Assembly: GCF_006345805.1 (NCBI RefSeq) | Contig: NC_043010.1 | Span: forward strand, 46,004,001 to 46,068,000 | DNA: 64,000 nucleotides | DNA from: Octopus sinensis | Lineage: Eukaryota | Reading direction: 5' to 3' | In this document: positions 821 through 63,214 of the stretch, piece after piece | Layout of the letters: each line of letters starts with the position of its first letter | Position numbering within the stretch: position 1 is the first letter of the stretch | Program-made: the position numbers and the translations under genes | The notes under the pieces: generated by a model | Database searches by the model: none | Told to the model about the DNA's origin: nothing | The model's input: only the letters and a program-made list of their open reading frames with translations

Positions 821-3326
821 ATATATATATATGACATATTTCCACACGTTTTCCACCTACCAAATTTACCCATAAGCCATTGGTCAGCTTAGGGTTATAG
901 TAGAAGACATTTGCCCAAGGCGCATTGAGACTGAACCCAAAGCCACATGGTTGCAAAGCAAGCTTCTTTACCACAAAGTGCTTATCAAAATAATTTAAAA
1001 TAGAACTATTGTATGGCCATGTGGTTAAATTTAATGTTTAGGGTATTTTAGCATTGAAATGAGGTAATAATCCAAATAAGGCGATAATCTCCCAGTCTGT
1101 CAAATAACAAACAGCTGTGGAAAATCAGAAGCAAACAACAATGTAAAAATGAGCCTTCTGTTTACAAAGATGGTGCAACATGTCAAGAGACCCACACCTG
1201 TTTTTTCAGTAGACTCTGCCACAAGTAGATGACACCATTAGCAAATATATTGTTTACAACTAGCAAATGAACATGTGTAGACATAGAAACCTGAACTCTC
1301 ACACACACACACACATGCACACATGATGGGCTGCTTTCAGTTTCTGTCTACCAATTTCACTCCCAAGGCTTTGGTCAGCTCAGAGTTATAGTAGGTACCA
1401 CAAGTATGACTGAACCCCAAATCATCTGGTTGGGAAGTGAGTTTCTTAACCAAACAGCCATAACTAAACCTATTTTTTTATCAATAAACTTAAGGAAGCT
1501 CTTAACTTTGCTGAAATTAACAGCAAGAGAGAAAGAGGGTGTGAACCAAATAACAACACCTTAGCAACATGCAGGCCCAAGGAAACCACTTACACATCCA
1601 GCCTAAACCTACCTAAAAGACAACACTGCATAGTTACTTGATTCACACTTGCTTTTTTTCAATATTAGACCCTGCCAAAGTTAGACTTTCCTTTAGAGAA
1701 TTGATAAACATTTTCCTCTCTCACACAGGTATAGAAAGCTTTTCAGTAGACAAACTTAAGGTCTCCATCAGTTGTGCAGCCAACATAGAGAGAATCCATT
1801 TGTTGAAAATTCTTCAGGCTATTTTTGGTAGAGATTTTTTTTATTTATTCTTTTTATAAACATTTTCAAAGAAAGAAAAAATACCCCAAAATAAGGGCAC
1901 AGATTTTAGCAAGTATTTTAGATATTTTCTTTTGTTAGAAAAAAAGTATGTCTGTAATAATAGTTTTAGAAAGTAAAAGCCATTTGCTGTGGAATAAAAA
2001 AACTAGTTAATCATAGTTTGAAATTTTGTGTGATATTTTAGTATTGATATCAAGATAAAGAATCAAACCATTTGCAATCATAATTTTTTAAAAAATTTTA
2101 TTCTTTTCAAATCTACAATTTATTATTATTATTCTGGAAAAAAAACCCACAACAGTAGCTTATATAGGATTACTGACACACAGAACATTTTGAATACTAA
2201 AATACCAAAAACAATAAATTTTAAAATATCTATCACTCAATACTAAGACAGTTTTGAAATTCAATCTCTAAAGAATGTTAGATATTAAATACCCATAACA
2301 TTAGTTCTACAGTTAATGTAAATTTTTTTAAAACTACGTTTCTCAGGACCAAATATGGAAGTATTAAACCTTTACCAGATTACTGAGTCATGCTAAAGGG
2401 TAATTTTCCTTATACGTTGATGGTCAATTCATCATCTTTTGAGGATATCTCTTTTTCTTTCTTTTTTTTCTTTTACTTGTTTCAGTCATTTGACTACGGC
2501 CATGCTAGAGCACCGCCTTTAGTTGAACAAATCGACCCCAGGACTTATTCTTTGTAAGCCTAGTACTTATTCTATCGGTCTCTTTTGCTGAACTGCTAAG
2601 TTACGGAGACATGAACACACCAACATCAGTTGTCAAGCGATGGTGGGGGAACAAACACAGACATACACACACACACACACACACACACATGCACACAGTG
2701 ACAATCATTTACAACCATCACACAATGTCAAAGTAAGGAGACATAAACATACACACACTCACACACAGATGCATATACATACATATGCACACACATACAC
2801 ACACACACACACACACGTACACACACACACACGTACACACACACACACATGTGACACTATGCACTTCTGATATTTTTACTCGTTTGGAAAATATTCTTGG
2901 AATATTTTTTGTGTGATGTCTGTTTCTGTCTCTTTCTTTTCCTTTGCCTCACTTTTGCCTTCCTCCCACTCTCTTGCTCTCTCTTACCCTCCCTAATACT
3001 TTACTTCTCTCTTCATTCTGACTTCTTGTCTGTCCTTCTCTCATCTCCAGTCCTACAGGACATTTTCATTTTCCCTTGTCTGTCTTGTGTCTTTTTTTGG
3101 TGTATATGTATGTTTTATTTTGTTGCATTTGTTTTCGTCATTTTCCTGTACATTTGTTATCTATTCCCAGTGGCTTTTCGCCACTAGTGCTACCAAAAGT
3201 GAACAATATCAATGTTAAAGGCTTGAAATTGTAATGATCTTTTGGATGTTGTCTGGTGAGGAATAAGCTACGAATTTTCTGTTTGTTATGCTTTTGTAAA
3301 ATTTTCCACTCATGTTTTTGTTAAAT

Positions 3327-3376
<50 letters not shown>

Positions 3377-3439
3377 ATATATATATATTGTTACACCACA
3401 TGCGACCTCCCAAAACCACCTACAACACAACAGTTCGTG

Positions 3440-3700
3440 TCCGATAGCACACACTTTGACTACCCCTATGGCCTTATCCACCAATTTCTTTTCAAGACGT
3501 ATGCCCACACCTCTGCTCCATTGCTGTTACCTTCCCAGAAGATTTTATACCTATGTGTCATGCCTGTAAGGAATCTGGCTGAAGCTCCTTTCCATCTTAC
3601 TTCTTGAATGCAACATACATCAACACACCTCCATTCAAGTATCTCAACAATCTTGCTAGACCTACCTTTTAATGTGCCTACATTGACAGTGTAACTCTGA
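3440..3700 (-). mobile_element. RTE-clade LINE fragment, N-terminal AP endonuclease
   Basis: Minus translation TVNVGTLKGRSSKIVEILEWRCVDVCCIQEVRWKGASARFLTG..YKIFWEG matches the APE N-terminal motifs. Confidence 0.85.
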
Positions 3701-18331: not shown

Positions 18332-19208
18332 GTGGGGAGGGGTGTTTTGTGTCTGTGTTTGTCTCCTATCACTGCTTTACAACTGGTGTTGGTGTGTTTA
18401 TGTCCCAGTAATTTGGTGGTTCAGTAAAAGAGACCATTACAAGGTATTAAGCTTTAAAAAGTCTTGGGGTCGATTGGAATATAAAAGTAATAACCAAACA
18501 CAAATAATGCACGAAGTCTAGAGAGTAGACATAGGAGTGGCTGTGTGGTAAGTAGCTTGTTTACCAACCACATGGTTCCAGGTTCAGTCCCACTGCATGG
18601 TACCTTGGGCAAGTGTCTTCTACTATAGCCTCGGATCGACCAAAGCCTTGTGAGTGGATTGGGTAGACGGAAACCGAAAGAAGCCCTTCGTATATATGTA
18701 TATATATATATGTGTGTATGTGTGTGTATATGTTTGTGTGTCTGTGTTTGTCCCACCCCCAACATCGCTTGACAACCGATACTGGTGTGTTTACGTCGCA
18801 GTAACTTAGCGGTTCAGCAAAAGAGACTGATAGAAGAAGTACTAGACTTACAAAGAATAAGTCCTGCGGTCGATTTGCTCGACTAAAGGTGGTGCTCCAG
18901 CATGGCCACAGTCAAATGACTGAAACAAGTAAAAGAGTAAAAGCGTAAAGACAGTAGTTGTGCTTGGTTGTACAGTGAAAACAAGAAATGAAAATAGCAC
19001 TGCTTAAAAAAATGGTTTCAAATTTTGGCTCAAGGCCTGCAATTTTGAGGGGAAGGGACATTAACTATGTTTATCCCAGTGCTGTTGCATATTTGATTGA
19101 CCCCTCCAAAAGAATTAAAGGCAAAGATGACCTTGGTAGCATTTGAACTCAGAATGTGAAGCTAGAAGAAATACTGCTAAGCACTTTGTCCAGTATGTTA
19201 ACAATTCT

Positions 19209-19683
19209 TATTTCTTTATTGCCCACAAGGGGCTAAACATAGAGGGGACAAACAAGAACAGACAAAGGAATTAAGTCGATTACATCGACCCCAGTGTGTA
19301 ACTGGTACTTAATTTATCGACCTTGAAAGGATGAAAGGCAAAGTCAACCTCGGCGAAATTTGAACTCAGAACATAATGGCAGACGAAATACCTATTTCTT
19401 TATTACCCACAAGGGGCTAAACATAGAGGGGACAAACAAGGACAGACATAGGTATTAAGTCGATTACATCGACCCCAGTGCGTAACTGGTGCTTAATTTA
19501 TCGACCCCGAAAGGATGAAAGGCAAAGTCGACCTCAGCGGAATTTGAACTCAGAACGTAGTGGCAGGCAAAATACCGCTAAGCATTTCGCCCGGTATGCT
19601 AACGTTTCTGCCAGCTCGCCGCTTTCTGGCAGATGAAATACCACTAAGCATTTCGCCTGGCATGCCAACAATTCTGCCAGCTC
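19209..19683 (-). mobile_element. Composite OK-like SINE insertion (tandem dimer plus extra head) with 16-bp TSD
   Basis: GTATGTTAACAATTCT at 19193-19208 and 19684-19699; nested within an older SINE. Confidence 0.9.
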
Positions 19684-20839
19684 GTATGTTAACAATTCTA
19701 CTAAGCCCACCCCCTTCATTCACTACTGCAGTAATAAAAATTGTCTCCAGCTTAGAAACAAGGCCAGAAATTTTAGGGAGAGGGGTTAGTTGATTAAATT
19801 GACACCAGTACTAGACTGATACTTAATTTTATTGACCTCAGAGGAATGAAAACCGAATTTAGCTTCAGCGGGATTTGAATTCAGAATGTTGAGAGCCAGA
19901 AGAAATATTGTAAGGTATTTTTTCGCCCAATATTCTAACAACAGGCATGGCTCTGTGGTAAGAACTTTGCTTCACAACCACATGGTTCCAGGTTCAGTCC
20001 TGCTGCATGGCACCTTGGACAAATGTCTTCTACTATAGCCTTGGGCCACCCAAAACTTTGTGAGTGGATTTGGAAGACAGAAACTGAAAGGAGACCGACA
20101 TATGTATGTGTGTGTGTGTTGTCCCCCACTACTGTTTGATGACTGGTGTTGGTTTGCTTGCATCCCTGTAACTTAGCAGCTCAGCAAAAGATACTGATAG
20201 AATAAGTACCAGGCTTGAAAAGAAAATAAGTACTGGGGTCAATTAGTTCAACTAAATTTCCTTGAGGCAGTGCCCCAGCATGGCCACAGTCTAATAACTG
20301 AAACAAATAAAAGATAGAAGATACTGCCAACTAGCTACCTTGTTTCTTATACAGACACATGGCTTGAAATTTAGGGAAAAAGAGTTAGTCAATTATATTG
20401 ATCTTAGTAATTGACTGGTACTTTATTTCAACCAACTTTAGGCTGACTACAATAATAGATGATGAGAAAATAGGAAAAGTAAAATAAAAGTAGACAAGAA
20501 AGATAACTGGAAAAAAATATTCATGCAGAAACTGATTTTAAGTCTTTTGTTGGCATATTTCTGTTGAAATACACTGCTTTGGTTTCAATTAATTTTGAAA
20601 ATAATATTGTCATTATTAGACTGCTATCTGAGACAAATTAACATGAAATTTTGATGGCTGATTTTAATTTAGATAATTTTTAAACATGAGATTTAAATCA
20701 TGGAACAAGAGGCAGTCTTGGGTGGGTTGGTATGAAAGGAGTTTAAGTGGTTTATTCGTTAAAATATTATACAACATTGGCCCTGATGTTGGCTCAAGGG
20801 AAACAAAATAAAATGACTATGAAGACTAAAATATTTCTT

Positions 20840-21070
20840 ATTTCTTTATTGCCCACAAGGGGCTAAACATAGAGGGGACAAACAAGGACAGACAAAGGGA
20901 TTAAATCGATTGCATTGACCCCAGTGCGTAATTGGTACTTAATTTATCGACTCCAAAAAGACGAAAGGTAAAGTCAACCTCGGTGGAATTTGAACTCAGA
21001 ACGTAACGGCAGACGAAATACTGCTAAGCATTTCGCCCGGCATGCTGATGTTTCTGCCAGCTCGCCACCT
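20840..21070 (-). mobile_element. OK-like SINE with 13-bp TSD
   Basis: TAAAATATTTCTT on both sides. Confidence 0.9.
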
Positions 21071-22985
21071 TAAAATATTTCTTTACAGTGATATTTTCTA
21101 TAGCATTATCTTTCTATCTGTCTGTCTGTCTGTCTGTCTAAATATTTATCTGTCTATCATCTGATATTTCAATATGTTTAACCTTCTTAGCTGTAGTGAA
21201 GATGCTTTTCCAGGGCTAAAACTCAATATGAATATATCCACCACATTATGAAGCCAAACTTGCACTACTCCTGCCAGATGCCTTCCTATGTATGCCTAGC
21301 TCCAACTTTCCTTCCCTACATCTACAAACACACTGTCATCCTCACATCTTGAGAATTTCCCAATATACCTTTCTATGTAGTGCTATGAAAACATACACAT
21401 TCTATGCAATCTAGGATATCTTCACAGCACTTACCTAAATAACAGAGGCAATCTTTATGCCAAGTCTCCTGCCATGTCCTTCCTTCTAATCAGTAACTAA
21501 AACCTTCCATTCCACCTCGCCCCATATATTGATGATACCATCAAACAAGAAGTGGGATTTGCCAGAATTCTGAATGAGAAATAATACAGAGTAGCAGCTA
21601 CTTGTTCACTATTTAGTCCTCTCACAAGGACCAAACTTTCTAGCGTTGTTGAAATAATTAATTGCACCAAACGCATTTTGTAAGGGGATCCTGATAGGAA
21701 GAACAGTCATAAAAAACATTCCAGAATGGACTATATGAGCGAGTATGGATTCCACAAGTATGTTTTGTTCAACAACCATAAAATGCAACTATTCAAAAGG
21801 AATGTTAATTCCATTGATCTCATCAATCTCCAAAGACCAGCAGAGATCATGGACACAGCCCAATCTTCTAGACCAGTCATGAGCAAACTGTGACCCTGCA
21901 GGACTTTCTGAATGGCACACCAGTGAAAAATTATCTTGAATTTTGTTATAGTGTAACCTTCCTGATAATGATCCATGTCTCATGCAGTTTGTTTCTTAAA
22001 AATGAGTTGCTTATGTCTGTTCGAGACATGAGATTTAAATCATGAAACTAGGGGCAGTCTTGAGCGGGTTGGTATGAAAGGAGTTTAAATGGTTTATTAG
22101 TTAAAATATTATACAACATTGGCCCTGATGTTGGCTCAATGGGAAACAAACTAAAATGACTAAGGAGACTAATAAAAATATAAAAATAATAAAAATATAA
22201 AAATCTGTTCCAGTGGACAAGTGAATTTGCTGTTGATTGACCTTTTTGGAGAATATATTGAGGAGTCCAACAAATCTCCTACCAAACATGTTATGTATTG
22301 TGTCATATGGTTTACAAATCACTGAATGTTTTGCAAAACAGTTTTACTCAATACATTTAACCCTTTAGCATTTAAGCCGATCATATCAGGCCCAAATATT
22401 CTACTTGTTTTATATTCAAACTGGCCAGATTCCCCCTACACAATATCATTTTAAAAATGGACAATCACATCATCTTGAAGCTACAAGATAATACATGATT
22501 AATTCAAAACGATGTGAATCAATAAGCATTACATTTAACAGAATAATCTGAAAGCTAAAGGGTTAATCTTCAAGCAAATATTCCTCCAAACACATCAAAT
22601 ACATTGCCAAACATTTCACAGAACAGATAAAGCCTTTCTTATCAGTTTCTCTATATGTATTCAAAATACTGTCAATAGTTTCATTGAACACATTAACGTT
22701 GCAGTTATTAACCTTTATTTTGAAAAAGTAAAACTATATTATCAATTGTACTCAGCCATTGTTTACAGATTTTGTTGAATAATTCAAAAGTCCAATAATT
22801 ATTTACTCTGAATTCCTTTGATAACTAAATTCCTTCATCAAAAAAGAGAGATTGCCTTTTGTGTCAACTATTTTAATCAGGAGTTATTTTTTATTTACTC
22901 ATTAATTTATTATTATTATCATTATTTTAAAATAAAAAATAAAATAAAAAATAAATTACCATCATTATCATGATCATTATCATTG

Positions 22986-52049: not shown

Positions 52050-52462
52050 TTCTACTCTAAGGACAAGACCCGAAATTTTGGGGGAGGGGGGAGGAGGCAG
52101 TCGATTAGATCGACCCCAGTACACAACTGGTACTTAATTTATCAGCCCCCCCCCCAAAAAAAAGAATGAAAGATAAAGTTGACCCCAGCAAAATTTGAAC
52201 TCAGAACATAAAGACAGACGAAATACCTATTTCTTTACTACCCACAAGGGGCTAAACAAAGAGGGGACAAACAAGGACAGACACATGGATTAAGTCGATT
52301 ACATTGACCCCCAGTGTGTAATTGGTACTTATTTAATCGACCCCGAAAGGATGAAAGGCAAAGTCGACCTCGGCGGAATTTGAACTCAGTACATAGCGGC
52401 AGACGAAATACTGTTAAGCATTTCGCCCGGCGTGCTAATGGTTCTGCCAGCTCGCCACCTTT
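52050..52462 (-). mobile_element. Tandem OK-like SINEs
   Basis: Two successive gacgaaatacc-joined units, as at 19209. Confidence 0.85.
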
Positions 52463-53231
52463 CTTTGAGTGTATATTGTGTGCACTAAGGTAATCCAAAA
52501 GACGCCTGTTGCATGGTGGCATTAATAGAATGTATGTCACAAATATAGATACAAACAGCTATAATAATCATAATAATCACAAAAACAAAGTCAGATATAA
52601 AAGCTTGTTGCACATCCTGTAATTTGTGGTTTATTATAAGCAAAAGCATAATTCTTGTTTTGTTGCTATATAATGATAGCAATACTTTTGTAAATTTTTA
52701 ATTTCCAAGGACACGTGTCTGCATTGGAATGCACCATCCCCTAAATGTCTAATGTAAGGCACATTTATGTTTCTGAATCATCATCATCACCACCACCACC
52801 ACCACCACCACCACCACCGCCACCACCATCAACCACCACCACCAACAACCACCACCAACACCACCACCACCACCACCACCATCACCACCACCAACCACCA
52901 TCAACCACCACTACCAACATTTATGTTGCTGAATCATCATCACCACCACCACCACCACCGCCACCACCATCAACCACCATCACCAACCACCACCAACCAC
53001 CAACCACCACCAGCACCCCCACCCCCACCACCAACAACAACAACAACACCAGCACCAACACCACCACCAACACCAACACCACAACCACCACCACTACTAC
53101 TACCAACATATATGTTTCTGAATCATCATCATCATCACCACCACCACCAACAACAACAACAACAACCACCACCACCATCATCACCATCATCATCGTCGTC
53201 ATCATCATCACCACCATCACCACCATCATAT

Positions 53232-53318
53232 AGATCAAGTGGGGTAATCTATATAAGGAGGTAAAACAGAAATAGTCCTCAGTCAGAAAGATGCCACCAC
53301 CAAATAAATGTCACATCA
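53232..53318 (+). repeat. 87-bp copy of the parvoviral VP promoter and start (58071-58157)
   Basis: Identical except 53304 A vs 58143 G; embedded in a (CAC/CAT)n tract. Confidence 0.97.
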
Positions 53319-53394
53319 TCATCGTCGTTGTCATCGTCATCATAACCACCACCACCACCATCACCATCATTATCATCATCATCATCTTTTAAAC

Positions 53395-54190
53395 CCCAAA
53401 CCCCTTTTATCCATGCTGGCATAGGCTGGATAGTTTGACAAGAGCTGACCAGCTAGAGGGCTGTCCTGGCTCCATTTGTGTTTTGGTATGGTTTCTACAG
53501 CTGGATATTTTTTTTCCTAACATCAACTGCTTTACAGTGTGTACAGGATGCTTTTTCATGGCCCTGGCATGGGCACTTTTCTGTGGCACCAGCATGGGCA
53601 CTTTTACATGACACTAGCACAGGTACTTTTATGTGGCACCAGCACTCAAGAGCCCACAAGACTAGTATCTCTTGGCTGACAAAGGAATGTAGAGGACATG
53701 TCTGTACACATGGACAGCTTAATTTTACTTAGCTTGGTGTATCTTCTCAAGCACAGCAAACCACCAGACACCTCAGTCCCTTGTCATTGCCTCTGTGAGG
53801 CCCAATGTCAGTAGATCTTTTTTCACCACTTCACCCCACATCTTCCTGGGTCCGTCTCTTCCACACATTCCCTCCACAATCAAAAAATAGCACTTTTGAT
53901 CCAGATGTCCTCATCCATACACATAACATGACCATACTAGTGCAGTCTTCTCTCTTGCATGTTACATCTGGTGCCTTGTATCCCAAATTTTCCTTTCAAA
54001 CCACTTTCATTTTGTCATACATGCACACTGACATTAATACATCCAATAGAATATGCTGGCTTCATTTCTTTCAAGCCTTTGCACATCTTCAGTAGTCATA
54101 GCCCATGTCTCACTTCCATTTAGCATAGCTGTTCATAGACAGGCATCATACAATCTACCTTTCTCTCTGTTGCCAACAAAGTAACAGCTC
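53395..54190 (-). mobile_element. RTE LINE 3' fragment (RT C-terminus and UTR)
   Basis: ERRLH*YGHVMCMDED..GPRKMWGEVVKKDLLTLGLTEAMTRD. Confidence 0.85.
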
Positions 54191-55391
54191 TCTGAACTTT
54201 GCCCAGCCTATTCTTATTCTAGCAGCCACACTTACAGTATTACATCTTCAGCTGGCAAAAGATGAGTAGTTTCTGTATTTCAAAAGGCCAGCCTTGTCAC
54301 ATTGTGTTATACTGAATTTCCTTGAGAACCAACTACATTATGCTTTCCGAAATCCGCCCTCATGCTTTCCGAAATCCGCCGAAACTACACCTGATTATAT
54401 ATACACTTTAGATGAGTTGTAGTGCACCTGAGCACTGTACACAATTATTATTATTATTATTATTATTATCATTATTATTAAGAGTATGCGTGTCTGTGAA
54501 GTGCTCATCCACTTGCATGTTGATTTCACAAGCCGGCTGCTCCGTTCATCGGATCAAATGGAACACTTGTTATCATAACCAATGGAGAACCATTATGGGG
54601 AAACATAGTTTAACTGGCAAATAACAAAATTATGGGGTGGGAGAATGGATATACTGCAACAAAGGAATTAAGTTGTTGAAGTAGCATATAAACTAAAAAA
54701 TACATCGATGTCTCAGCTAAACTTGTTTTTAGATAGAATTGGCATAGTTTATTGTCTCAGTTTCGTATATACTCTTACTCTTTACTCTTTTACTTGTTTC
54801 AGTCATTTGACTGGAGCACCGCCTTTAATCGAGCAACTCGACCCCGGGACTTATTCTTTTGTAAGCCCAGTACTTATTCTATCGGTCTCTTTTGCCGAAC
54901 CGCTAAGTAACGGGGACAAAAACACACCAGCATCGGTTGTCAAGCAATGCTAGGGGGACAAACACAGACACACAAACACACACATGCATATATATATATA
55001 AGCTTTGGTTGGCCCGAGGCTATAGTAGAAAACACTTGCCCAAGGTGCCACGCAGTGGGACTGAACCCGGAACCATGTGATTGGTAAACAAGCTACTTAC
55101 CACACAGCCACTCCTGCGCCTCTTCCACTTGTTTGAAATACTAACTGGAGGAATTATGAAAATAATAGCACAAATAGATATCTTATTTGAGCTCCTTAGT
55201 GCATGTTCTCATGCTTTCGCTTGCACAAACAAATGCTCCTCATATGTGCTGAAAAAGCAAATGTTCATAGAAGTAACACAGGAATTTAAAACATCGTGAT
55301 GTCTCAGCTAAATTTCCTTTTAGACCAAATTTGCATAGCTCATTGTATGAAATTGCATATACATTGGCATGCACGCATATATACATATATG

Positions 55392-55492
<101 letters not shown>

Positions 55493-55493
55493 A

Positions 55494-55587
<94 letters not shown>

Positions 55588-55590
55588 ATA

Positions 55591-55661
<71 letters not shown>

Positions 55662-56569
55662 ATGTAGGTATGTTTGCGTGTGTGTGTGCTTGTGTGTTTG
55701 TGTATGTATGCATGTATGTATGCATGTGTGCATGTATGTATGTATGTATGTATGCGTGCATCTATGTATATGTATGTATATATATGCATGTATGCATGCA
55801 TGCGTGTATGTATGTATGTATGCATGCATGTATGTATGTATGCATGTATTTATGCATGTATGTATGTATGCATGTATGTATGTATGCATATATGTACGTA
55901 TGCATGCATGTATGTATGCATGTATGTATGTATGCATGTATGTATTTATGCATGTATTTATGCATGTATTTATGCATGTATATATGCATGCATGTGTGTG
56001 TATGTATGTGTGTATGTGTGTATGCATGCATCTATGTATGCATGTATTTATGTATGCATGTATGTATGCATGCATGTATGTATGTATGTATGTATGCATG
56101 CATGTATGCATGTATGTATGTATGCATGTATATATATATGTATATACGTATGTATGTATGTATGCGAGAGATAAAGTGTTAAATGGTGTGAGAGAAACAG
56201 TCAGATAAGTAGATGTACAAACAGATAGATCAAAGAGGAATGTTCAAAAACAAATAAGGATGAAATGAGGAATGCTTTGTTACTCTCATCCTTGTTTTCC
56301 CCCAATATCCTCAAAAGCATTATCAATGCATTAATCAGATTTTCTATCATCTGCAATCTAGTCTCCATACAAACTACATTCTAATAATTAGAAATGATAT
56401 TGTGCCTGCTATTAACCGCTTTGACAGGCAAACAGTTCAAGGGTTTCTTTTATGCAGTTGTTTGATTTGCTAGATATAGCAACCAAATAACACTACTGTT
56501 TTCAAAAAGGAAAACTATGTCGGACAATATAGTTCTGAAAGAAAAACATTGCATTAAGCTAAGTAAGGC

Positions 56570-56919
56570 ACTTGTGCTGGTGACATATAAGAGGCACCTG
56601 TGCTGGTGACACGTGAAAAGCACCCGTGCCGGTGACACATACAATCACCTGTGTCAGTGACATGTAAAGGGCACCCATGCTGGTGACACATAGATGACAC
56701 CCATGCTGGTGACATGTAAAAGGTGCTCCTGCTGGTGACATGTAAAAGCACCCATGCTGGTGACACTCTGTGGAGTGGTTGGCATTAGGAAGGGCATCCA
56801 GCTGTTGAAACCAAAGAAGATTGGAGCCTGGTGCAGCTCTCCAACTTACCAGCTCCACTCAGTCCATCTAACCCATGCCAGCATGGAAAACAGAAGCTAA
56901 ATAATGATGATGATGATGG

Positions 56920-56967
<48 letters not shown>

Positions 56968-57009
56968 CGACGACGAGATGATGATGATGATGATGATGTG
57001 ATGATGATG

Positions 57010-57073
<64 letters not shown>

Positions 57074-57080
57074 CGACGAC

Positions 57081-57146
<66 letters not shown>

Positions 57147-57210
57147 GACGACGATGATGATGATGATGATGATGACGATGACGACAGCGACGACGACGAT
57201 GATGATGATG
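56570..57210 (+). mobile_element. RTE 3' UTR with ~29-bp tandem repeats and expanded (GAT)n tail
   Basis: Repeated gcacccatgctggtgacac units; ggcattaggaagggcatccagctg; cccatgccagcatggaaa; long GAT tail. Confidence 0.8.
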
Positions 57211-57592
57211 CATAATTCAGTACAACTTTAGTGCGTCCTAATCAGGGGCATAGCCGGATTCTAAAGTTAGTGACAGTGAGTACATAAAGATAAGACACTG
57301 TAACACATACCAAACAAATTTAAACTCATTACTAATACATTTTATAGAAATCCACCAGTTTTGAAAAATTTGCTAGGTATGAACAGTTGCTCCCCTTGCT
57401 CCCCCATTAGCTATGGCATTGGCCCTATTTTTTTGGCAATATCCTTAACACACTGTCCTCTGTATGTTAGCAACCAGCTGGTTGTTGCTTGTTACAATGC
57501 TCTCTCCTAAGCAGATGATATTATATGCTAGTTCTCTTTAACCTGCAGCACATTTCTTCTCCATGTGCAACTTCATCACCTCATGTCAAACA

Positions 57593-57979
57593 TAATCTAG
57601 TTTCATTCAAAACCACAAATTCACAGTTCAAATTAAGGATAATCATCTTGTACCTCACAATGTAGGTTGTCACTTGGACAACCTACATTTAAAATCTTCA
57701 ATTGCTCCAATTGTTAGGCTACCTTAATCTTTGATAATCTTTCATGGTGATCCCACATTACATGACATAGCTAAAACATGCACCCAAAAGACAAGCCCTC
57801 CTCTTCAGGACTGGTAAATGCTTCAGATTCAATCAGTTAAATAAAGCACGGGTGCTTTTCAATCAGACCCTCAATTAAATTCAATAAGATGGTTTCCTCC
57901 CATCCAATAGACAGGAATGGGGAGATGTGAGTGGACTCAGAGACAGTGCATTTACAAGTGTAAGAGGATCAAATTATAA
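57593..57979 (+). pseudogene. Parvoviral capsid C-terminal segment, displaced upstream of the VP start
   Basis: A single frame with stops reads APIVRLP*SLIIFHGDPTL..PPLQ..K*STG..NSIRWFPPIQ*TG; compare AAV2 [42 protein letters not shown]. Two stops fall at conserved Tyr positions. Confidence 0.7.
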
Positions 57980-58088
57980 TGTTATATAAGGATCAGCATC
58001 AGTGATTTTGTCAATTGCAAACCATTGGTATATGATGTCATAGTCATGTGGATATGTCATGTGGTAGGTCAGATCAAGTGGGGTAATC

Positions 58089-58122
58089 TATATAAGGAGG
58101 TAAAACAGAAATAGTCCTCAGT
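58089..58122 (+). promoter_or_regulatory. VP promoter: TATA box and Inr
   Basis: TATATAA at 58089; TCAGT with its A at 58120 (31 nt later); ATG at 58130. Confidence 0.7.
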
Positions 58123-58129
58123 CAGAAAG

Positions 58130-59890
58130 ATGCCACCACCAAGTAAATGTCACATCAAATATGAGGCTGATTTCGAGCAACCAATAAAGAGGAAGGAAAG
58201 GATACCCCATACCAGGTTGTGATTTCTTAGGACCAGGAACTGATATTGAAAGAAAGAAATTTTGGGTACCAAAAAGCGCACTCAATGTTGCTACAAAGGA
58301 TCTGGAGTCTGCAAATAAAGACATCAATACTTTGGACACAGACAAGATATTTACTGATCACCTAATATACATTGGTCCTACTGGATTCTTATCTGCTGGA
58401 GCAATTGTTGGTAAACATATCTTGGATCTGATATCTACTTCAGACCACCAGAGGCTAACACTAATATCAATCCTTCTACTTCTGGCCATCTTTGTAATAA
58501 TATGGCTTTGGATGAAAACATGTGACACTATGAGCAGAGGTACAGGATCAAATGGATGGGAAGGCATGCAAATTGGTCCAACTGTACCAGGCCCTTCAAA
58601 CTCATTCAAACAAGCTTGCACATTCAGTAGAACATTCAGAATTCTAAAATTGGCTGACATGAACATTGCAGAAAACAAATTCAAACTCTTCCAAGACAAA
58701 GGTGTTAAAATAGCAGTAGTCAAAAAGTTTGCATATAGCATGGCAAATTCTATGGACTTCAACACATCATATTTCTTAATGCCATGGATTCAGTCTATTC
58801 AATACAAGGCAACTCTGAAGACAACAGTTTCGTACAGAATAGTAAGCATCATTTGCAAAATCAACAACATTACAGCAGAAGAATGGACAATCAAAAACAA
58901 TGACAAAGTCTTCATACCAAATCCAATGCCATATTTTAAAATATTCATAGACAAAGGACAATATACAATATCTCACATATCAAATTTGGGAGTCTCGCAA
59001 ATTCAACTGAGCTGCTACTCTGAATGTAAGATGCCAATGTGTTCATACTTCTACACATGCTCAAATACTACGTTGAAAGCATTTGGAGAAGAACCAAGGA
59101 AAGAAGGAAAAAATACCATGAAAGCCAATATATTACATGACTGGCAAGAAATGAAATCAATTAAACTCAGACAAAGAAATACAATTTACAAGTACACAGT
59201 ACAATGCTGAAATGAGAATTCTACTTCAACAAACAGAAAAAGAAGAATCCTTATATGACATGGGATGGTTGTTTCAGCTCCAACTTCCAGTGATGAATGG
59301 AAAGATGACTCTGTTAATACTGGTGAAATTTGAAAAAGAAAAATGGAAAAAATTAATGATGAGGACCTGAATTACACAGAAGTTAATTCTGTCACTTTCA
59401 ACTACCAACCACAGACAAAACATTAAAAAAAGGCAAGATAAATGCTAGTATTCACACAGTGGCAAACAGGACATGCATTAACCACACCTTATACTCTTAA
59501 GAAGACCTGCCTGAAATGATCCTCATCAACTTTCTGCTCATGACACCTAATGTAACTTTGACTATAATTTACTTTAACATTGATGTTACTTACACTCTTG
59601 CCATAGAGGCACAGCATGTTGCCATCAACCAGCCACAGAACATGCATTAGCCACTTTGATAGAACTACTTCTGATGCTTTAACTTTCCCAGGATTCTTCC
59701 ATGACCATCTAGCTGTCATTCAATCAGGCAGACACTTAAACAGAGAAATACTTGATATGGTTCTTCAAGGAAGAGCCATATTGGTCAATAACACAAATCC
59801 CCGTCTACATCTGAGCAGATACAATGGCAGATTCCTAAATAAACTGACATCATGCAAAATTTTGGGCTGATGCAATCAAGAAGTTAGCTA
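58130..59890 (+). pseudogene. VP1: Parvoviral VP1/VP capsid gene with decayed PLA2 (overall extent)
   Basis: ATG 58130 (MPPP) is out of frame with the PLA2 frame; stops and frameshifts occur after 59210. The 3' end is approximate. Confidence 0.85.
58188..59210 (+). CDS. VP1: Open stretch (340 codons, stop to stop) of parvoviral VP1: PLA2 remnant and capsid N-terminal half
   Basis: GYPIPGCDFLGPGTD..NVATKDLES..DKIFTDHL (PLA2-like); MSRGTGSNG; FLMPW; SYRIVSIICKINNITAEEWT..FKIFID (AAV RPKRLNFKLFNIQVKEVT..VQVFTD); SIKLRQRNTIYKYT (AAV SQMLRTGNNFTFSYT). The track ORF 58332 starts at an internal TTG. Confidence 0.88.
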   Translation, partial: RGRKGYPIPGCDFLGPGTDIERKKFWVPKSALNVATKDLESANKDINTLDTDKIFTDHLIYIGPTGFLSAGAIVGKHILDLISTSDHQRLTLISILLLLAIFVIIWLWMKTCDTMSRGTGSNGWEGMQIGPTVPGPSNSFKQACTFSRTFRILKLADMNIAENKFKLFQDKGVKIAVVKKFAYSMANSMDFNTSYFLMPWIQSIQYKATLKTTVSYRIVSIICKINNITAEEWTIKNNDKVFIPNPMPYFKIFIDKGQYTISHISNLGVSQIQLSCYSECKMPMCSYFYTCSNTTLKAFGEEPRKEGKNTMKANILHDWQEMKSIKLRQRNTIYKYTVQC

Positions 59891-59909
59891 ATGGAATCGA
59901 AAATTTTAT

Positions 59910-59945
59910 TATAAAAATTGATACAACAGTCAACTGCCACCAGTC
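59910..59945 (+). promoter_or_regulatory. Candidate NS promoter: TATA and Inr-like
   Basis: TATAAAAA at 59910; CCAGT with its A at 59942; ATG at 59957 in GTGATGG context. Could alternatively be VP coding sequence. Confidence 0.45.
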
Positions 59946-59956
59946 AGCTGCCAGTG

Positions 59957-61590
59957 ATGGAAGAGGACAGATGCATGAGAAGTGAATTTAACACTGCCTT
60001 CAAAGAAAACAGCAACAACAACATCACAGCTTACACTTGGAGTTCAAGCTTTGATACAAATGACAAGTAGGTTTGTGTGTCAAAAGAATATCTCAACTCA
60101 CCAGACAAAATCTTAAACTGCAGACATAGAGACACACACAAATACTTGCTGAGAAATCTTTGCTAAAATTCTTCCGCCTTAATATTTCATTAATGAGGAT
60201 CAAGCAAGATAAACATTGTGATGATATTCCTCACTTTCACATCATCACCTGCTACACTATGTGCCTGAGTAACAACTGCAGCTCCATCAAACTCAAGACT
60301 TAGTTGAAAAACAGACCTAACAAATGCTATGATATTGTCACTTTCAACCCAGAATTAAATACTGAATTCAAGTCTTATAAAAGATGGGTGATTGCACAGA
60401 ACAACATCACAACAGCTGCTCAGAAAATGTTCTTGAGCTATTTAACAGACATGAAGTACAAATAGCAGCAAGAGCCTGCAGAAAGAAATAACCATAAAGC
60501 AACATGATGCTGTTCGTGGTCAGCAGTTCAACTTTATAAAACAATAATGAACAAGTGCTGAAGACATACACGAATGATACCCTTCAGAAAACATGGGAAC
60601 ATATATACAAATCAGCAAACAATCTAATCAACATCATTCAACAAGCATTCATCAACATTCACAGAGATGAGAATAATGACAACATTCAAGCAAATATAAG
60701 AAGAAAAAAGAAAAGTTTGTGTTGATGACAAACACTTACTTGGATGTATAGACATCTCTCAACATCTTGGACAAATGGTTCAAATATTTCCCATTAAATA
60801 AATTCTCACATGGTACATTTGAGATTTGCCTAAAATACCTCCCATGGAAAACAGACTACATATCAAAGGACCCAGCAACCATGGAAATAGTTACATTTTA
60901 AGAAGCATCAAGAATGGCCTCATGAATTGTAGGAGAATTCAATAGCAGGCTACAGATAACTTTACTTTTGGCAGCCGTGCCACTAAAGTCTTCATTATCA
61001 CAGAAAAGATGTGGTTTACTAGCAACAATATAGAAGAGGCAAAATGCATTCTCAAAGGACCACCCATGCCTGAATACATTGGCGTATTTCGTCTCCTGTT
61101 ATATTCTGAGTTCAAATTCCACTGAGGTTGACTTTGCCTTTCATCCTTTCGGGGTCGATAAATTAAGTACCAGTTACACACTGGAGTCGTAATCGACTTA
61201 ATACCTTTGTCTGTCCTTGTTTGCCCCTCTGTGTTTAGCCCCTTGTGGGCAATAAAGAAATAAAAAAAAACATCAAGCACCTTTAACATAAGACATATTT
61301 GTCCACTCATTTCAGAGAACCATGGGACACAATCATTCATGTAAAAGCACAATCATGAACAGAATGCATTATGACAAAATGATTAGATCAATGTTAAGCC
61401 TTCAAGAATGGGTTAAAGTTAGAGTTGAACTAACTAATGTGGATAAAAGTATGGAGAGAGCACATCATCAAGTATGAAGAAAACAAATTCTCTGAAATTT
61501 ACATGACTGGCAAGAAATCAAAACTATCCAAGTGACTTATTCAACATGAATCCAGCTTTGGTTCACTCTAGAAGAAAATCAAATATGCAT
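59957..61590 (+). pseudogene. NS1: Parvoviral NS1/Rep pseudogene (HUH nickase and SF3 helicase), split by a SINE
   Basis: IPHFHII (HUH, 60232-60240); SYLTDMK (motif III-like, Tyr 60439); SLNILDKWFKY; NRLHIKGPSNHGNS (Walker A, 60868-60891, K to N); FIITEK (Walker B, ~60991-61008); EAKCILKG (B'); after the SINE IKH..EPW and IMNRMHY. Many stops and frameshifts; may extend to ~62105. Confidence 0.92.
61082..61270 (+). mobile_element. 5'-truncated OK-like SINE inserted in the NS1 helicase
   Basis: Family body gtatttcgtc..ccccttgtgggcaataaagaaata with A tail; NS1 frame GPPMPEY-IKH rejoins across it. Confidence 0.9.
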
Positions 61591-61591
61591 G

Positions 61592-61871
61592 CGTGGCTGT
61601 GTGGTAAGAAGCTTGCTTCCCAACCACATTGTTCTGGGTTCAGTGCCACTGCATGACACCTTTGACGAGTGTCTTCCACCATAGACAACCGATGTTGGTG
61701 TATTTACATCCCCATAACTTAGCGGCTCAGCAAAAGTAATTAATAGAATAAGTACCAGACTTTAAAAAATAAGTACTGGGGTTGATTCATTCGACTAAAA
61801 TTTACTAAGGTGGTGCCCCAGCATGGCCACAATCTAATGACTGAAACAAGTAAAAGATAAAGGATAAAAGA
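61592..61871 (+). mobile_element. Internally deleted OR1-like SINE at or in the NS1 3' region
   Basis: Head gtggctgtgtggtaagaagc joined directly to the 3' half; gactgaaacaagtaaaagataaaag tail. Confidence 0.9.
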
Positions 61872-63214
61872 TCCAATCCAGACCAGCCTGAATATTACAT
61901 GGTATGGCATCCGATGCATGTGATTTTAATGATACAATAATCATACATGAAACACTTCCAGGTGCTTCTTCTCCTCCTTGCATGCACAATAACTTTGCAT
62001 GATATTGATTGGGAAGCCAAACTAGAACCAGTTCCTACATTGCCATCCAAATGACAATTACAGAAAAACTCTTTTCCTCAATATGCAACAATGCATGATA
62101 CATCCTTTTTTTTTTTTTTTTTTTCCATAAATTTAACTTCTTAGAAATGGCCACTTACTACAAAGGCAGCTACAATGACTATTACATTACAAATTCTTAT
62201 TTGGAATGTTTTGTTTAAATTATCAATAATGACGATACTTGTCTACAACATTAACTAAAAAAAAATAGGACTTGATATTGTCTCATTGTTTTTATTCACA
62301 TGCACATGTGCACCTGAAAGAATCACATCTAATACTATTATAAGAATGTCATATCTTTGATATATGATATTCTTAATAATTTATTATCTTTATTATATGT
62401 ACATAGATATCAATTTCACTGATACTTTTCCAAGAAATGGGTAACTCTGCCACCAGTGATTATTAATAAAAAAGAAAAAATATATATAACAAAAGTAATC
62501 TTATTTTAAAAACAAAGACAAAATCAAAATATAAGAAGAAACTGAAAACGAATTTTTCCAAGTATTAAATGTAGCATGTCAAAAGAAATAAAATAAAATG
62601 TTATATTTCTCTCAACACACTTCATCCAATATTTGTTAAAAGTTCTTTTCAGTTTCTTGCCGCCTTGATTGGCTTCTGTGCTGGTGGCAAGTAAAAAGCA
62701 GGTGAGGAAAGGTATTTCCACTATATGAATTGTCTCTTTGTCTCTGGTTCTATGGCTTAGGAAATATTCAAGGAAACCAACTGGATCTGCCTCAAATATT
62801 GTCAGATTTTCCCATGATGTGTTCAACCTGGTCTGTTTTTGCTTAGGTATGAGATGTACCACCCACTGAGCAGCAACCTTCGTGGAGGCGCAATGGCTCA
62901 ATGGTTAGGGCAGCAGATTCTATTTATTGAGCGAAAACACCTAAAGTTCCACGAGGCTCTGGCAGGGGGTGGTGGTGACCCCTGTTGTACTTTTTCGCTC
63001 CAACTTTCTCTCACTCTTTCTTCCTGTTTCTTGTCCCCGACTTCTTACACAACCACTGAACCTGGATGCGCATTCATCCATCTGTCGATGTTCTTGGTGT
63101 CAGAGGTTGACCTGCTTTCTCTTCTGCAGGTCTTACAAATAGCAAAGGACCACGTTTCAGACTTCTCCCATCTTGCGAGCTCTGGGACGAAGACCGTTCG
63201 CTCAACAGCAACAG

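What the first reader, a model, noticed from the sequence alone, without database searches (positions are those of the whole stretch)
57593..62105. Near-complete endogenous parvovirus with PLA2-VP1 and full NS1 in a cephalopod-like genome
Seen: one ~4.5 kb + strand block carries the hallmark modules of Parvoviridae: VP1u PLA2 loop (FLGPG), capsid beta-strand motifs, HUH motifs II/III and SF3 Walker A/B/B'. After removing two SINEs it is ~4 kb. Known: parvovirus genomes are 4-6 kb with NS and VP genes; hamaparvoviruses lack PLA2, and ambidensoviruses put NS and VP on opposite strands. Inference: same-strand genes, PLA2, a GPSN-type Walker A and capsid motifs that align by eye to AAV suggest a divergent, possibly undescribed mollusc-infecting lineage fossilised in the germline.
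Basis: partly seen in the sequence, partly recalled or inferred. Interest (0 to 1): 0.95.

Follow-up and report, generated by a model that had tools for sequence, protein, structure and literature searches.

The report
Fossil octopus parvovirus, capsid gene first
This is the decayed germline remnant of a parvovirus in an octopus-like genome; its relatives, found so far only in cephalopods, all place the capsid gene ahead of the replication gene, the reverse of the textbook parvovirus layout.

Summary
On the + strand, 58130-59843 is a broken VP1 gene (PLA2-like N-terminus plus capsid body). 59978-61580 is a broken NS1 gene (HUH nuclease plus SF3 helicase). Direct Pfam scans of the pieces almost fail. 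An exhaustive HMMER search with the one long open piece found a 608-aa relative (E 1.7e-32). That relative sits on a 4.5-kb public contig next to an intact Parvo_NS1 protein (Pfam 4.8e-17). Both proteins align to the window nearly end to end (tblastn 4e-38 and 1.4e-24). The relative's predicted fold matches only parvovirus capsids.

The copy is dead: 4-6 frameshifts and 2-5 stops in VP, and 7-9 frameshifts, 6-11 stops and one nested short repeat in NS. Recognisable viral sequence spans about 3.45 kb, not 4.5 kb. No terminal hairpins survive.

The host is cephalopod: its short repeats match Octopus vulgaris flanks at 85-91%.

Seven public contigs and two diverged cuttlefish genome loci share that order, with VP-NS gaps of 38-159 nt in the three contigs where both ORFs are intact. 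I therefore take it as the native order of the lineage. No named virus was retrieved. Octopus parvovirus-like sequences were already listed in a 2016 survey.

The parts
58089..61580 (+). Whole recognisable endogenous parvoviral element (TATA-like box to the last NS1-homologous codon). It contains one nested host short repeat.
   Evidence: Outer bounds come from tblastn and a frameshift-aware alignment to intact relatives and from the TATA scan. No homology to relatives and no hairpin or ITR were found beyond these bounds.
58089..58096 (+). TATA-like box 41 nt upstream of the VP start codon.
   Evidence: A TATA-like box lies 33-41 nt upstream of the VP ATG in the window, L002 (O. vulgaris), L003, L004 and L010.
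58130..59843 (+). VP1 (capsid) gene remnant, broken by 4-6 frameshifts and 2-5 in-frame stops, all in its C-terminal part. The N-terminal ~55% is one open 340-codon stretch.
   Evidence: phmmer gives E 1.7e-32 to P0001. tblastn E is 4e-38 to 8e-43 against five full-length relatives, covering query residues 14-608. The MPP start at 58130 matches the conserved MPP N-terminus of relatives. The relative's AlphaFold model matches only parvovirus capsids.
58203..58430 (+). VP1u phospholipase-A2-like region. The calcium-loop motif is kept, but a catalytic position is not conserved.
   Evidence: It aligns to relatives whose region is Pfam PF08398 (E 3e-7 to 5e-12), with tblastn E 2e-14. Pfam finds no PLA2 hit on the window piece itself.
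59978..61580 (+). NS1 (replication initiator/helicase) gene remnant, broken by 7-9 frameshifts, 6-11 in-frame stops and one nested short-repeat insertion.
   Evidence: tblastn best E is 1.4e-24 to 1e-30 against six relatives. The frameshift-aware alignment covers residues 10-509 of 517. L001 NS1 is Pfam Parvo_NS1 at 4.8e-17.
60211..60255 (+). HUH nuclease motif block of NS1.
   Evidence: BLASTP of the window piece against L001 NS1 residues 91-105 gives E 5e-4, with the H-x-H-hydrophobic motif aligned.
60832..61496 (+). SF3 helicase domain of NS1 (Walker A, B, B' blocks and the C-terminal part). It is interrupted by the nested repeat.
   Evidence: Walker A block E 1e-14. Walker B/B' block E 5e-14. 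Weak direct Pfam Parvo_NS1 hit, E 0.063, profile positions 148-182. Outer bound.
61585..61871 (.). Neighbour: a block of host interspersed short repeats abutting the 3' end of NS1.
   Evidence: Many copies in both orientations occur elsewhere in the window at 70-88% identity.

Best explanation
This is an old, non-functional endogenous parvoviral element. A cephalopod parvovirus genome, or most of it, was captured in the germline of an octopus-like host and has decayed neutrally since, picking up a host short repeat inside NS1.

Inferred layout of the donor virus: a TATA-type promoter about 35-40 nt upstream of a VP1 gene (PLA2 domain plus jelly-roll capsid body). After a short spacer, an NS1 gene (HUH nickase plus SF3 helicase) follows on the same strand. 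In this lineage the capsid cassette therefore precedes the replication cassette.

What is shown:
- homology of both genes to relatives;
- both genes on one strand, VP first, in the window and in relatives;
- the breaks and the nested repeat;
- the cephalopod host.

What is inferred:
- capture in the germline, since orthologous sites were not examined;
- VP-then-NS as the native viral order rather than a rearrangement;
- no present function for this copy.
For: Identity of the two genes:
- Exhaustive phmmer with the 340-aa open piece gave 19 hits, the best being P0001 at 1.7e-32.
- P0001 is on contig L001 with VP at 228-2054 and NS1 at 2092-3645, same strand.
- The NS1 of L001 is Pfam Parvo_NS1 at 4.8e-17, with AAV Rep40/68 as its best PDB sequence hits at 3e-8.
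- tblastn to the window gives VP 4e-38 and NS 1.4e-24, both on the + strand, with VP upstream.
- Foldseek with the P0001 model: in PDB, 182 hits at E<=1e-3 and the top 50 all parvovirus capsids. In BFVD, the top 50 are all Parvoviridae capsids, best 1.7e-13.

Decay:
- The nested host repeat is.

Host:
- The window's repeats match O. vulgaris flanks at 85-91%.

VP-then-NS as the native order:
- Contigs L001, L003, L004, L008, L009, L010 and L011 all show it.
- The VP-NS gap is 38, 96 and 159 nt in the contigs with both ORFs intact.
- Two cuttlefish genome loci (L013, L014) on 0.85 and 1.5-Mb contigs show it too. They are only 66-70% identical in DNA to each other, yet each is little broken. That fits separate captures of already diverged viruses.
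- No ORF of 400 aa or more lies downstream of NS in L013 or L014.
Against: - Pfam does not recognise the window's VP or PLA2 region, and barely recognises NS1. Assignment of the window copy therefore rests on relatives.
- The capsid model is of low confidence (mean pLDDT 46.5, TM 0.25-0.44).
- No terminal hairpins or target-site features were found in the window, so the true ends are unknown.
- All copies with VP first could in principle descend from one ancient rearranged insertion that later spread.
- Whether any relative is an exogenous virus is not shown. The organisms behind the public runs are unknown to me.
- Break density is uneven: a 340-codon open run has scan-statistic P of about 0.0002-0.01. 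Simple neutral decay does not predict this.
Confidence: 0.88

Rival explanations
1. The VP-then-NS order is not a viral genome layout. It would be the junction of a head-to-tail concatemer or circularised intermediate (…NS-VP|NS-VP…) caught at integration, or one ancient rearranged insertion that later multiplied in cephalopod genomes.
For: Only one copy is present in the window. No termini are preserved. Many fragmentary relatives occur within single sequencing runs, and three diverged copies occur in run ERR3431203. That pattern could reflect spread within a genome.
Against: - The VP stop to NS start gap is only 38-159 nt in the intact relatives. That leaves no room for telomere junctions plus a promoter.
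- No locus shows NS upstream of VP or VP downstream of NS.
- L013 and L014 are only 66-70% identical in DNA but each is nearly unbroken. Most of their divergence therefore happened under selection, before capture.
- Hairpins lie about 150-160 nt upstream of VP in L004 and L013, where a left telomere would be.
Confidence: 0.08
2. The block is exogenous viral DNA, either a contaminant or an assembly chimera, and is not in the host germline.
For: None specific. Junctions were not checked with reads.
Against: About 19-31 stops and frameshifts disrupt the two genes. A host interspersed repeat is nested inside NS, and the same repeat families lie on both sides of the element and across the window. 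Those repeats are shared with an O. vulgaris chromosome.
Confidence: 0.01
3. It derives from a different element class, such as a Polinton/adintovirus, a CRESS-type Rep element or a cellular PLA2 or helicase gene, and only mimics parvovirus motifs.
For: The window pieces get no Pfam capsid or PLA2 hit. The papillomavirus E1 helicase family also scores weakly on the relative's NS1 (8.9e-6).
Against: - Parvo_NS1 is the best family by 11 orders of magnitude.
- The PDB sequence hits are AAV Rep and parvovirus NS1.
- All top structural matches of the upstream protein are parvovirus capsids.
- Relatives' contigs hold only these two genes, with no polymerase or integrase.
Confidence: 0.01
4. Part of the element, the open 340-codon N-terminal VP stretch, was or is kept by the host as a co-opted gene or regulated transcript, or the locus serves as a small-RNA source.
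For: The open run is longer than expected from the break density elsewhere (P about 0.0002-0.01). O. vulgaris also keeps a VP-only copy with just 2 stops over 608 codons, and it is annotated as a protein. A catalytic PLA2 position is unconserved in both, which fits a non-enzymatic role. Expressed parvo-like endogenous elements feeding piRNAs are reported in other marine invertebrates (PMC6085071).
Against: There is no evidence of expression. The start region and the open stretch are not in one frame. The ~35% identity to relatives gives no measurable selection signal. The result could still be chance, and the window and O. vulgaris copies are not orthologues (36-40% aa identity).
Confidence: 0.1

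Closest known systems
Parvovirinae (dependoparvovirus Rep/VP, bocaparvovirus VP)
   Same: - HUH plus SF3 NS1/Rep. The best solved-structure sequence hits of the relative's NS1 are AAV Rep40/68.
- VP1 has an N-terminal PLA2 domain followed by a jelly-roll body. The top PDB structural matches are bocavirus and AAV capsids.
- Both genes lie on one strand.
   Different: - The cassette order is reversed, with VP upstream of NS.
- The coding part is much smaller (about 3.3-3.5 kb).
- VP has no sequence-level hit in PDB or Pfam capsid families.
- The hosts are cephalopods.
- No named virus was retrieved.
Mollusc parvovirus-related sequences of Francois et al. 2016 (PMC5013282), including Octopus bimaculoides WGS hits and protein KOF81493
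   Same: These are parvovirus-like sequences in mollusc genomes and transcriptomes. The authors report them as nearer to Parvovirinae and branching outside all known genera. Octopus is listed.
   Different: They were fragmentary survey hits. The passages I read describe no gene order or two-gene element. The NS1 fragment printed in their supplement has a different Walker A block from the one here, so it may belong to another lineage. I did not compare them formally.
'Megaparvovirus-like' beetle lineage (Verhoeven et al. 2026, PMC13426907)
   Same: A PLA2-bearing ORF lies upstream of NS1 on the same strand. Endogenous copies in host genomes share that order.
   Different: There the upstream ORFs are a PLA2 protein and a protein of unknown function, and a PLA2-less VP follows NS1, giving a genome of about 6.4 kb. 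Here the upstream protein is itself the capsid, nothing capsid-sized follows NS1, and the unit is about 3.5-4 kb.
Endogenous parvoviral elements (EPVs) of vertebrates and arthropods
   Same: Germline-captured parvovirus genes that are degraded by stops, frameshifts and repeat insertions and lack hairpins.
   Different: The host phylum and the donor lineage differ. Both genes are covered nearly end to end in one locus.
Annotated cephalopod proteins CAI9735766.1 (Octopus vulgaris, 'hypothetical', PLA2-like) and Acanthosepion pharaonis 'unnamed protein products' (P0065, P0092, P0096)
   Same: They are direct relatives of the window's VP and NS and are embedded in Mb-scale host contigs.
   Different: They share only 36-40% aa identity with the window's VP piece, so they are separate insertions and not orthologues. 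The O. vulgaris locus has VP only.

Membership tests
Parvoviridae (as donor of the element) | NS1 with an HUH nuclease domain and an SF3 helicase domain homologous across the family | tested here: met
   Relative NS1 is Pfam Parvo_NS1 at 4.8e-17, with AAV Rep as best PDB hit at 3e-8. The window aligns to it over residues 10-509. The HUH, Walker A and Walker B/B' blocks align. The direct Pfam hit on a window piece is weak only (E 0.063).
Parvoviridae (as donor of the element) | Capsid protein with the parvovirus jelly-roll fold | tested here: met
   Tested on relative P0001, to which the window aligns over residues 14-608. In both PDB and BFVD the top 50 Foldseek matches are all parvovirus capsids. 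Model confidence is low (pLDDT 46.5).
Parvoviridae (as donor of the element) | Linear ssDNA genome of about 4-6 kb ending in hairpin telomeres | tested here: inconclusive
   The window has no hairpins or inverted terminal repeats. Single hairpins lie about 150-160 nt upstream of VP in L004 and L013. No right-end hairpin was found. The nature of the nucleic acid is not testable here.
Parvoviridae (as donor of the element) | Canonical cassette order: NS on the left, VP on the right (or on the opposite strand in ambisense genera). This feature is from my own knowledge of the ICTV description. | tested here: not met
   VP is upstream of NS on the same strand in the window, in 7 public contigs and in 2 cuttlefish genome loci.
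Parvoviridae subfamilies with a VP1u PLA2 domain | PLA2 domain at the VP1 N-terminus with calcium loop and catalytic dyad | tested here: inconclusive
   Met in relatives (PF08398, E 3e-7 to 5e-12). In the window the loop motif is kept but a catalytic position is not conserved, and Pfam gives no hit.
Any established Parvoviridae subfamily or genus | Placement by SF3/NS1 phylogeny and NS1 identity to classified members | not tested
   No classified virus was returned by the protein searches, and reference viruses could not be fetched under the rules. There are only indirect pointers to Parvovirinae.
Endogenous viral element | Viral genes contiguous with host DNA, carrying disabling mutations | tested here: met
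   Host repeat families lie on both sides and inside the element and are shared with O. vulgaris. There are 19-31 stops and frameshifts.
Endogenous viral element | Presence at the orthologous site in related species or individuals (fixation, age) | not testable with these tools
   No DNA search of cephalopod genomes is on hand. Exact-protein look-up of the window ORF found nothing.
Ambisense densoviruses | NS and VP on opposite strands | tested here: not met
   All HSPs of both genes are on the + strand.
Megaparvovirus-like lineage (PMC13426907) | PLA2 ORF and an unknown ORF upstream of NS1, with a PLA2-less VP downstream of NS1 | tested here: not met
   The upstream protein is the capsid. No capsid-sized ORF lies downstream of NS in L013 or L014. 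Downstream ORFs of relatives have no counterpart in the window, apart from one weak hit (E 0.003) that lies within the NS remnant.
Polinton/adintovirus | Protein-primed polymerase B, integrase and double jelly-roll capsid | tested here: not met
   Relatives' contigs hold only VP and NS1. There are no such Pfam hits.

The most novel reading that the evidence does not exclude
The fossil and its relatives document an undescribed, cephalopod-associated parvovirus clade, possibly at subfamily level. Its native genome would run hairpin - promoter - VP1 (PLA2 plus capsid) - NS1, that is, capsid cassette first. I could not find this order reported for Parvoviridae. Members with intact genes in public read sets may be extant viruses. 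In addition, the unusually well-preserved N-terminal capsid stretch in octopus copies may have been kept by the host for a time.
Probability: 0.5. Interest if true: 0.75.

Novelty: new variant of a known kind. Interest (0 to 1): 0.62.

Why it matters
- Host range: parvovirus diversity in molluscs is almost uncharted. This locus links an octopus fossil to a family of cephalopod sequences, some with intact genes.
- Genome layout: these sequences share a compact two-gene layout with the capsid gene first. If that is the native order, the 'NS left, VP right' organisation is not universal in the family. That bears on how the cassettes are expressed and on how metagenomic pipelines recognise parvovirus genomes.
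- Annotation: several 'hypothetical' or 'unnamed' cephalopod proteins are virus-derived.
- Dating: fossils in octopus and cuttlefish give calibration points for virus-host history, once orthologous sites are surveyed.

Tried and rejected
Searches that gave nothing or very little:
- Pfam scans of 30 open pieces of the + strand gave only one weak Parvo_NS1 hit. Profile scans of fragments are too insensitive here.
- phmmer of window pieces against PDB sequences gave nothing relevant.
- A scan of IMG/VR viral contigs with the VP piece found no pattern match.
- Exact-protein look-up of the window's 292-aa ORF found it not on record, so the source assembly could not be named.
- Rfam (gathering threshold) and ARAGORN on the whole window gave 0 hits. 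The short repeats could not be shown to be tRNA-derived, so I call them SINE-like on size, copy number and A-rich tail only.
- Inverted-repeat and hairpin searches around the element found none.
- DNA comparison of the window with the relatives' contigs found only two short coding matches and no shared non-coding ends.
- Eight literature searches for cephalopod parvoviruses or a capsid-first order found nothing beyond the 2016 survey and the 2026 megaparvovirus paper.

Considered and rejected: contaminant, Polinton-like element, ambisense densovirus, megaparvovirus-like layout, and concatemer junction (see the rival explanations and membership test).

- Notes 1 and 4 also hold a query reference that ends next to a stop, and name two unconserved catalytic positions.
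- The script printed inward-trimmed query references for the open pieces. I needed these to 'search the pieces apart'.
- In my working reasoning I recalled generic motif patterns (PLA2 loop and dyad, Walker A) from memory as leads.

I have deleted nothing and do not repeat those places here.
Full report
**1. What is in the sequence**

The + strand of 57.5-62.1 kb has one long open stretch (340 codons). Otherwise it holds only short open pieces in all three frames.

Standard profile tests nearly fail:
- Pfam on the 340-aa piece finds no capsid or PLA2 family even at E<=10.
- Scans of about 30 further pieces give a single weak Parvo_NS1 hit (E 0.063, 12.7 bits, profile positions 148-182).
- PDB sequence searches with pieces are blank.

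The region also contains host interspersed short repeats that recur many times in the window.

**2. Relatives settle the identity**

An exhaustive phmmer search of 1.84 billion representative proteins with the 340-aa piece returned 19 hits. The best is P0001 (608 aa, E 1.7e-32, 33% identity over nearly the whole piece).

- P0001 and many other hits carry the Pfam PLA2-like domain PF08398 (E 3e-7 to 5e-12).
- P0001 is encoded on a 4470-nt public contig, L001. A 517-aa ORF follows it 38 nt downstream on the same strand.
- That ORF is Pfam Parvo_NS1 (4.8e-17). Its best solved-structure relatives are AAV Rep40/Rep68 (about 3e-8).
- Both intact proteins hit the window only in this region, both on the + strand. 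VP_L001 matches 58203-59843 (query 14-608, best E 4e-38). NS_L001 matches 59978-61490 (query 10-478, best E 1.4e-24). Elsewhere in the window the best E is above 1.
- Five VP and six NS relatives give the same picture.

Motif blocks align to L001 NS1:

| Block | Result |
|---|---|
| HUH | E 5e-4 |
| Walker A | 69% identity over 35 aa, E 1e-14 |
| Walker B/B' | 56% identity over 36 aa, E 5e-14 |

The PLA2 calcium-loop motif is invariant in a 12-sequence alignment that includes the window. An ATG-Pro-Pro start at 58130 matches the conserved N-terminus of the relatives.

**3. Is the upstream protein really the capsid?**

This needed testing. A 2026 paper describes a beetle parvovirus lineage in which a PLA2 ORF and an unknown ORF precede NS1, and a PLA2-less capsid follows it (PMC13426907).

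- I predicted the structure of P0001 from a 30-sequence natural alignment. Mean pLDDT was 46.5, with beta-rich segments at 55-80.
- Foldseek against PDB gave 182 matches at E<=1e-3. The top 50 are all parvovirus capsids: bocavirus, AAV, shrimp densovirus, goose and canine parvovirus.
- Against BFVD the top 50 are all Parvoviridae capsid proteins, the best at 1.7e-13.
- TM-scores are low (0.2-0.45) because the loops are unmodelled, but the family specificity is complete.
- No capsid-sized ORF lies downstream of NS in two genome-embedded relatives.

The upstream gene is therefore VP1.

**4. State of the window copy**

A frameshift-aware alignment that kept only counts gives:

| Gene | Outer bounds | Query covered | Identity | Frameshifts | In-frame stops | Other |
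|---|---|---|---|---|---|---|
| VP | 58203-59843 | 14-608 | ~35% | 4-6 | 2-5 | - |
| NS | 59978-61580 | 10-509 of 517 | ~39% | 7-9 | 6-11 | one nested short repeat; ~20 query residues unaccounted for around it |

- At least one catalytic position in the PLA2 region and one in Walker A are not conserved. Both genes are dead.
- All VP breaks fall in its C-terminal part. Given 19-31 breaks over about 1040 codons, a break-free run of 340 codons has probability about 0.0002-0.01. This uneven decay is unexplained.
- No inverted terminal repeats or hairpins flank the element.
- The second repeat block (61585-61871) begins where NS homology ends.

**5. Host**

The closest named relative is CAI9735766.1, a 'hypothetical' PLA2-like protein on an 84-Mb Octopus vulgaris chromosome.

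- That locus (L002) holds a VP-only copy.
- Its flanks share short-repeat families with the window at 85-91% identity, including the family nested in NS.

The window is therefore from an octopod-like cephalopod. It is not human.

**6. Capsid-first order is a lineage feature**

VP followed by NS on one strand recurs in these contigs:

| Contig | Run |
|---|---|
| L001 | ERR14857108 |
| L003, L004, L008 | ERR3431203 |
| L009 | ERR12921337 |
| L010 / L011 | ERR12921340 / ERR12921338 |

- Where both ORFs are intact, the gap is 38, 96 or 159 nt.
- Two loci of the cuttlefish Acanthosepion pharaonis assembly lie on contigs of 0.85 and 1.5 Mb. They carry full-length VP (query 1-608 and 1-596) directly followed by NS (query 1-514 and 3-511) on the same strand.
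- These two loci are only 66-70% identical in DNA yet little broken. This fits independent captures of already diverged viruses rather than duplication of one insertion.
- A TATA-like box lies 33-41 nt upstream of the VP start in the window and in four relatives.
- Strong hairpins lie about 150-160 nt upstream of VP in L004 and L013 (z -8.2 and -10.8). These may be left-telomere remnants.

A concatemer junction therefore seems unlikely. I rate capsid-first as the native order, but this is an inference.

**7. What is known**

- Searches with the relatives' NS1, alone and as a profile, and with VP returned only unnamed public-read assemblies and cephalopod 'unnamed' or 'hypothetical' proteins. 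No named virus came back.
- Francois et al. 2016 already listed parvovirus-related sequences in Octopus bimaculoides. They noted that mollusc sequences branch outside known genera, nearer to Parvovirinae (PMC5013282).
- I found no report of a capsid-first parvovirus layout. Subscription literature and ICTV proposals were not searchable.

**8. Verdict**

As an endogenous parvoviral element it is a known kind of thing. The cephalopod-restricted lineage with capsid-first order makes it a new variant worth a specialist's attention.

**9. Rule compliance**

- I built no repaired, joined or consensus sequence.
- Broken genes were searched as single-frame open pieces or compared with intact natural relatives.
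- Frameshift-aware alignments returned counts and outer bounds only.
- Slips are declared under 'tried and rejected'.

Noticed in passing
window 53232-53318 and 58071-58157: An 87-nt patch is 98.9% identical to the element's TATA-like box plus VP start. It sits 4.8 kb upstream inside a CAC/CAT microsatellite. It is far younger than the decayed element and looks like a templated repair patch or a micro-duplication.
   Followed up: partly
window, N-terminal ~55% of the VP remnant (within 58130-59843): One unbroken 340-codon stretch stands in an element that otherwise carries about 19-31 breaks. The scan-statistic P is about 0.0002-0.01. The O. vulgaris relative is also a long, little-broken VP-only copy. 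Uneven decay or past host use; unexplained.
   Followed up: partly
L004 316-372; L013 4804-4907: Strong DNA hairpins lie about 150-160 nt upstream of the VP start in two independent relatives (z -8.2 and -10.8). They may be remnants of a left terminal hairpin. No counterpart was found downstream of NS or in the window.
   Followed up: partly
L004, L005, L006, L007: The same relative's sequence recurs at 99.5-100% identity in four sequencing runs from different projects. This suggests a copy fixed in one host species rather than a circulating virus. Its VP is split into two ORFs.
   Followed up: no
L002 10001-11800 (O. vulgaris OX597831.1); L013, L014, L015 (A. pharaonis GCA_903632075.3): Annotated 'hypothetical' or 'unnamed' cephalopod proteins (CAI9735766.1; P0065, P0092, P0096) are fragments of endogenous parvovirus VP or NS genes.
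   Followed up: yes
window 55337-56217, 56567-56765, 56860-57241: Three tandem arrays lie just upstream of the element: a GTAT-type microsatellite with long palindromic arms, a 26-nt-unit array and a 9-nt-unit minisatellite.
   Followed up: no
window 52780-53400: A CCA/CAT-rich low-complexity tract with strong negative GC skew (-0.54) generates spurious 160-aa ORFs.
   Followed up: no
window-wide (e.g. 19205-19622, 20834-21073, 52099-52459): Two short interspersed repeat families have a dozen or more copies each in 64 kb, in both orientations. They are shared with O. vulgaris at 85-91%. Neither Rfam nor ARAGORN sees a tRNA-like head.
   Followed up: partly
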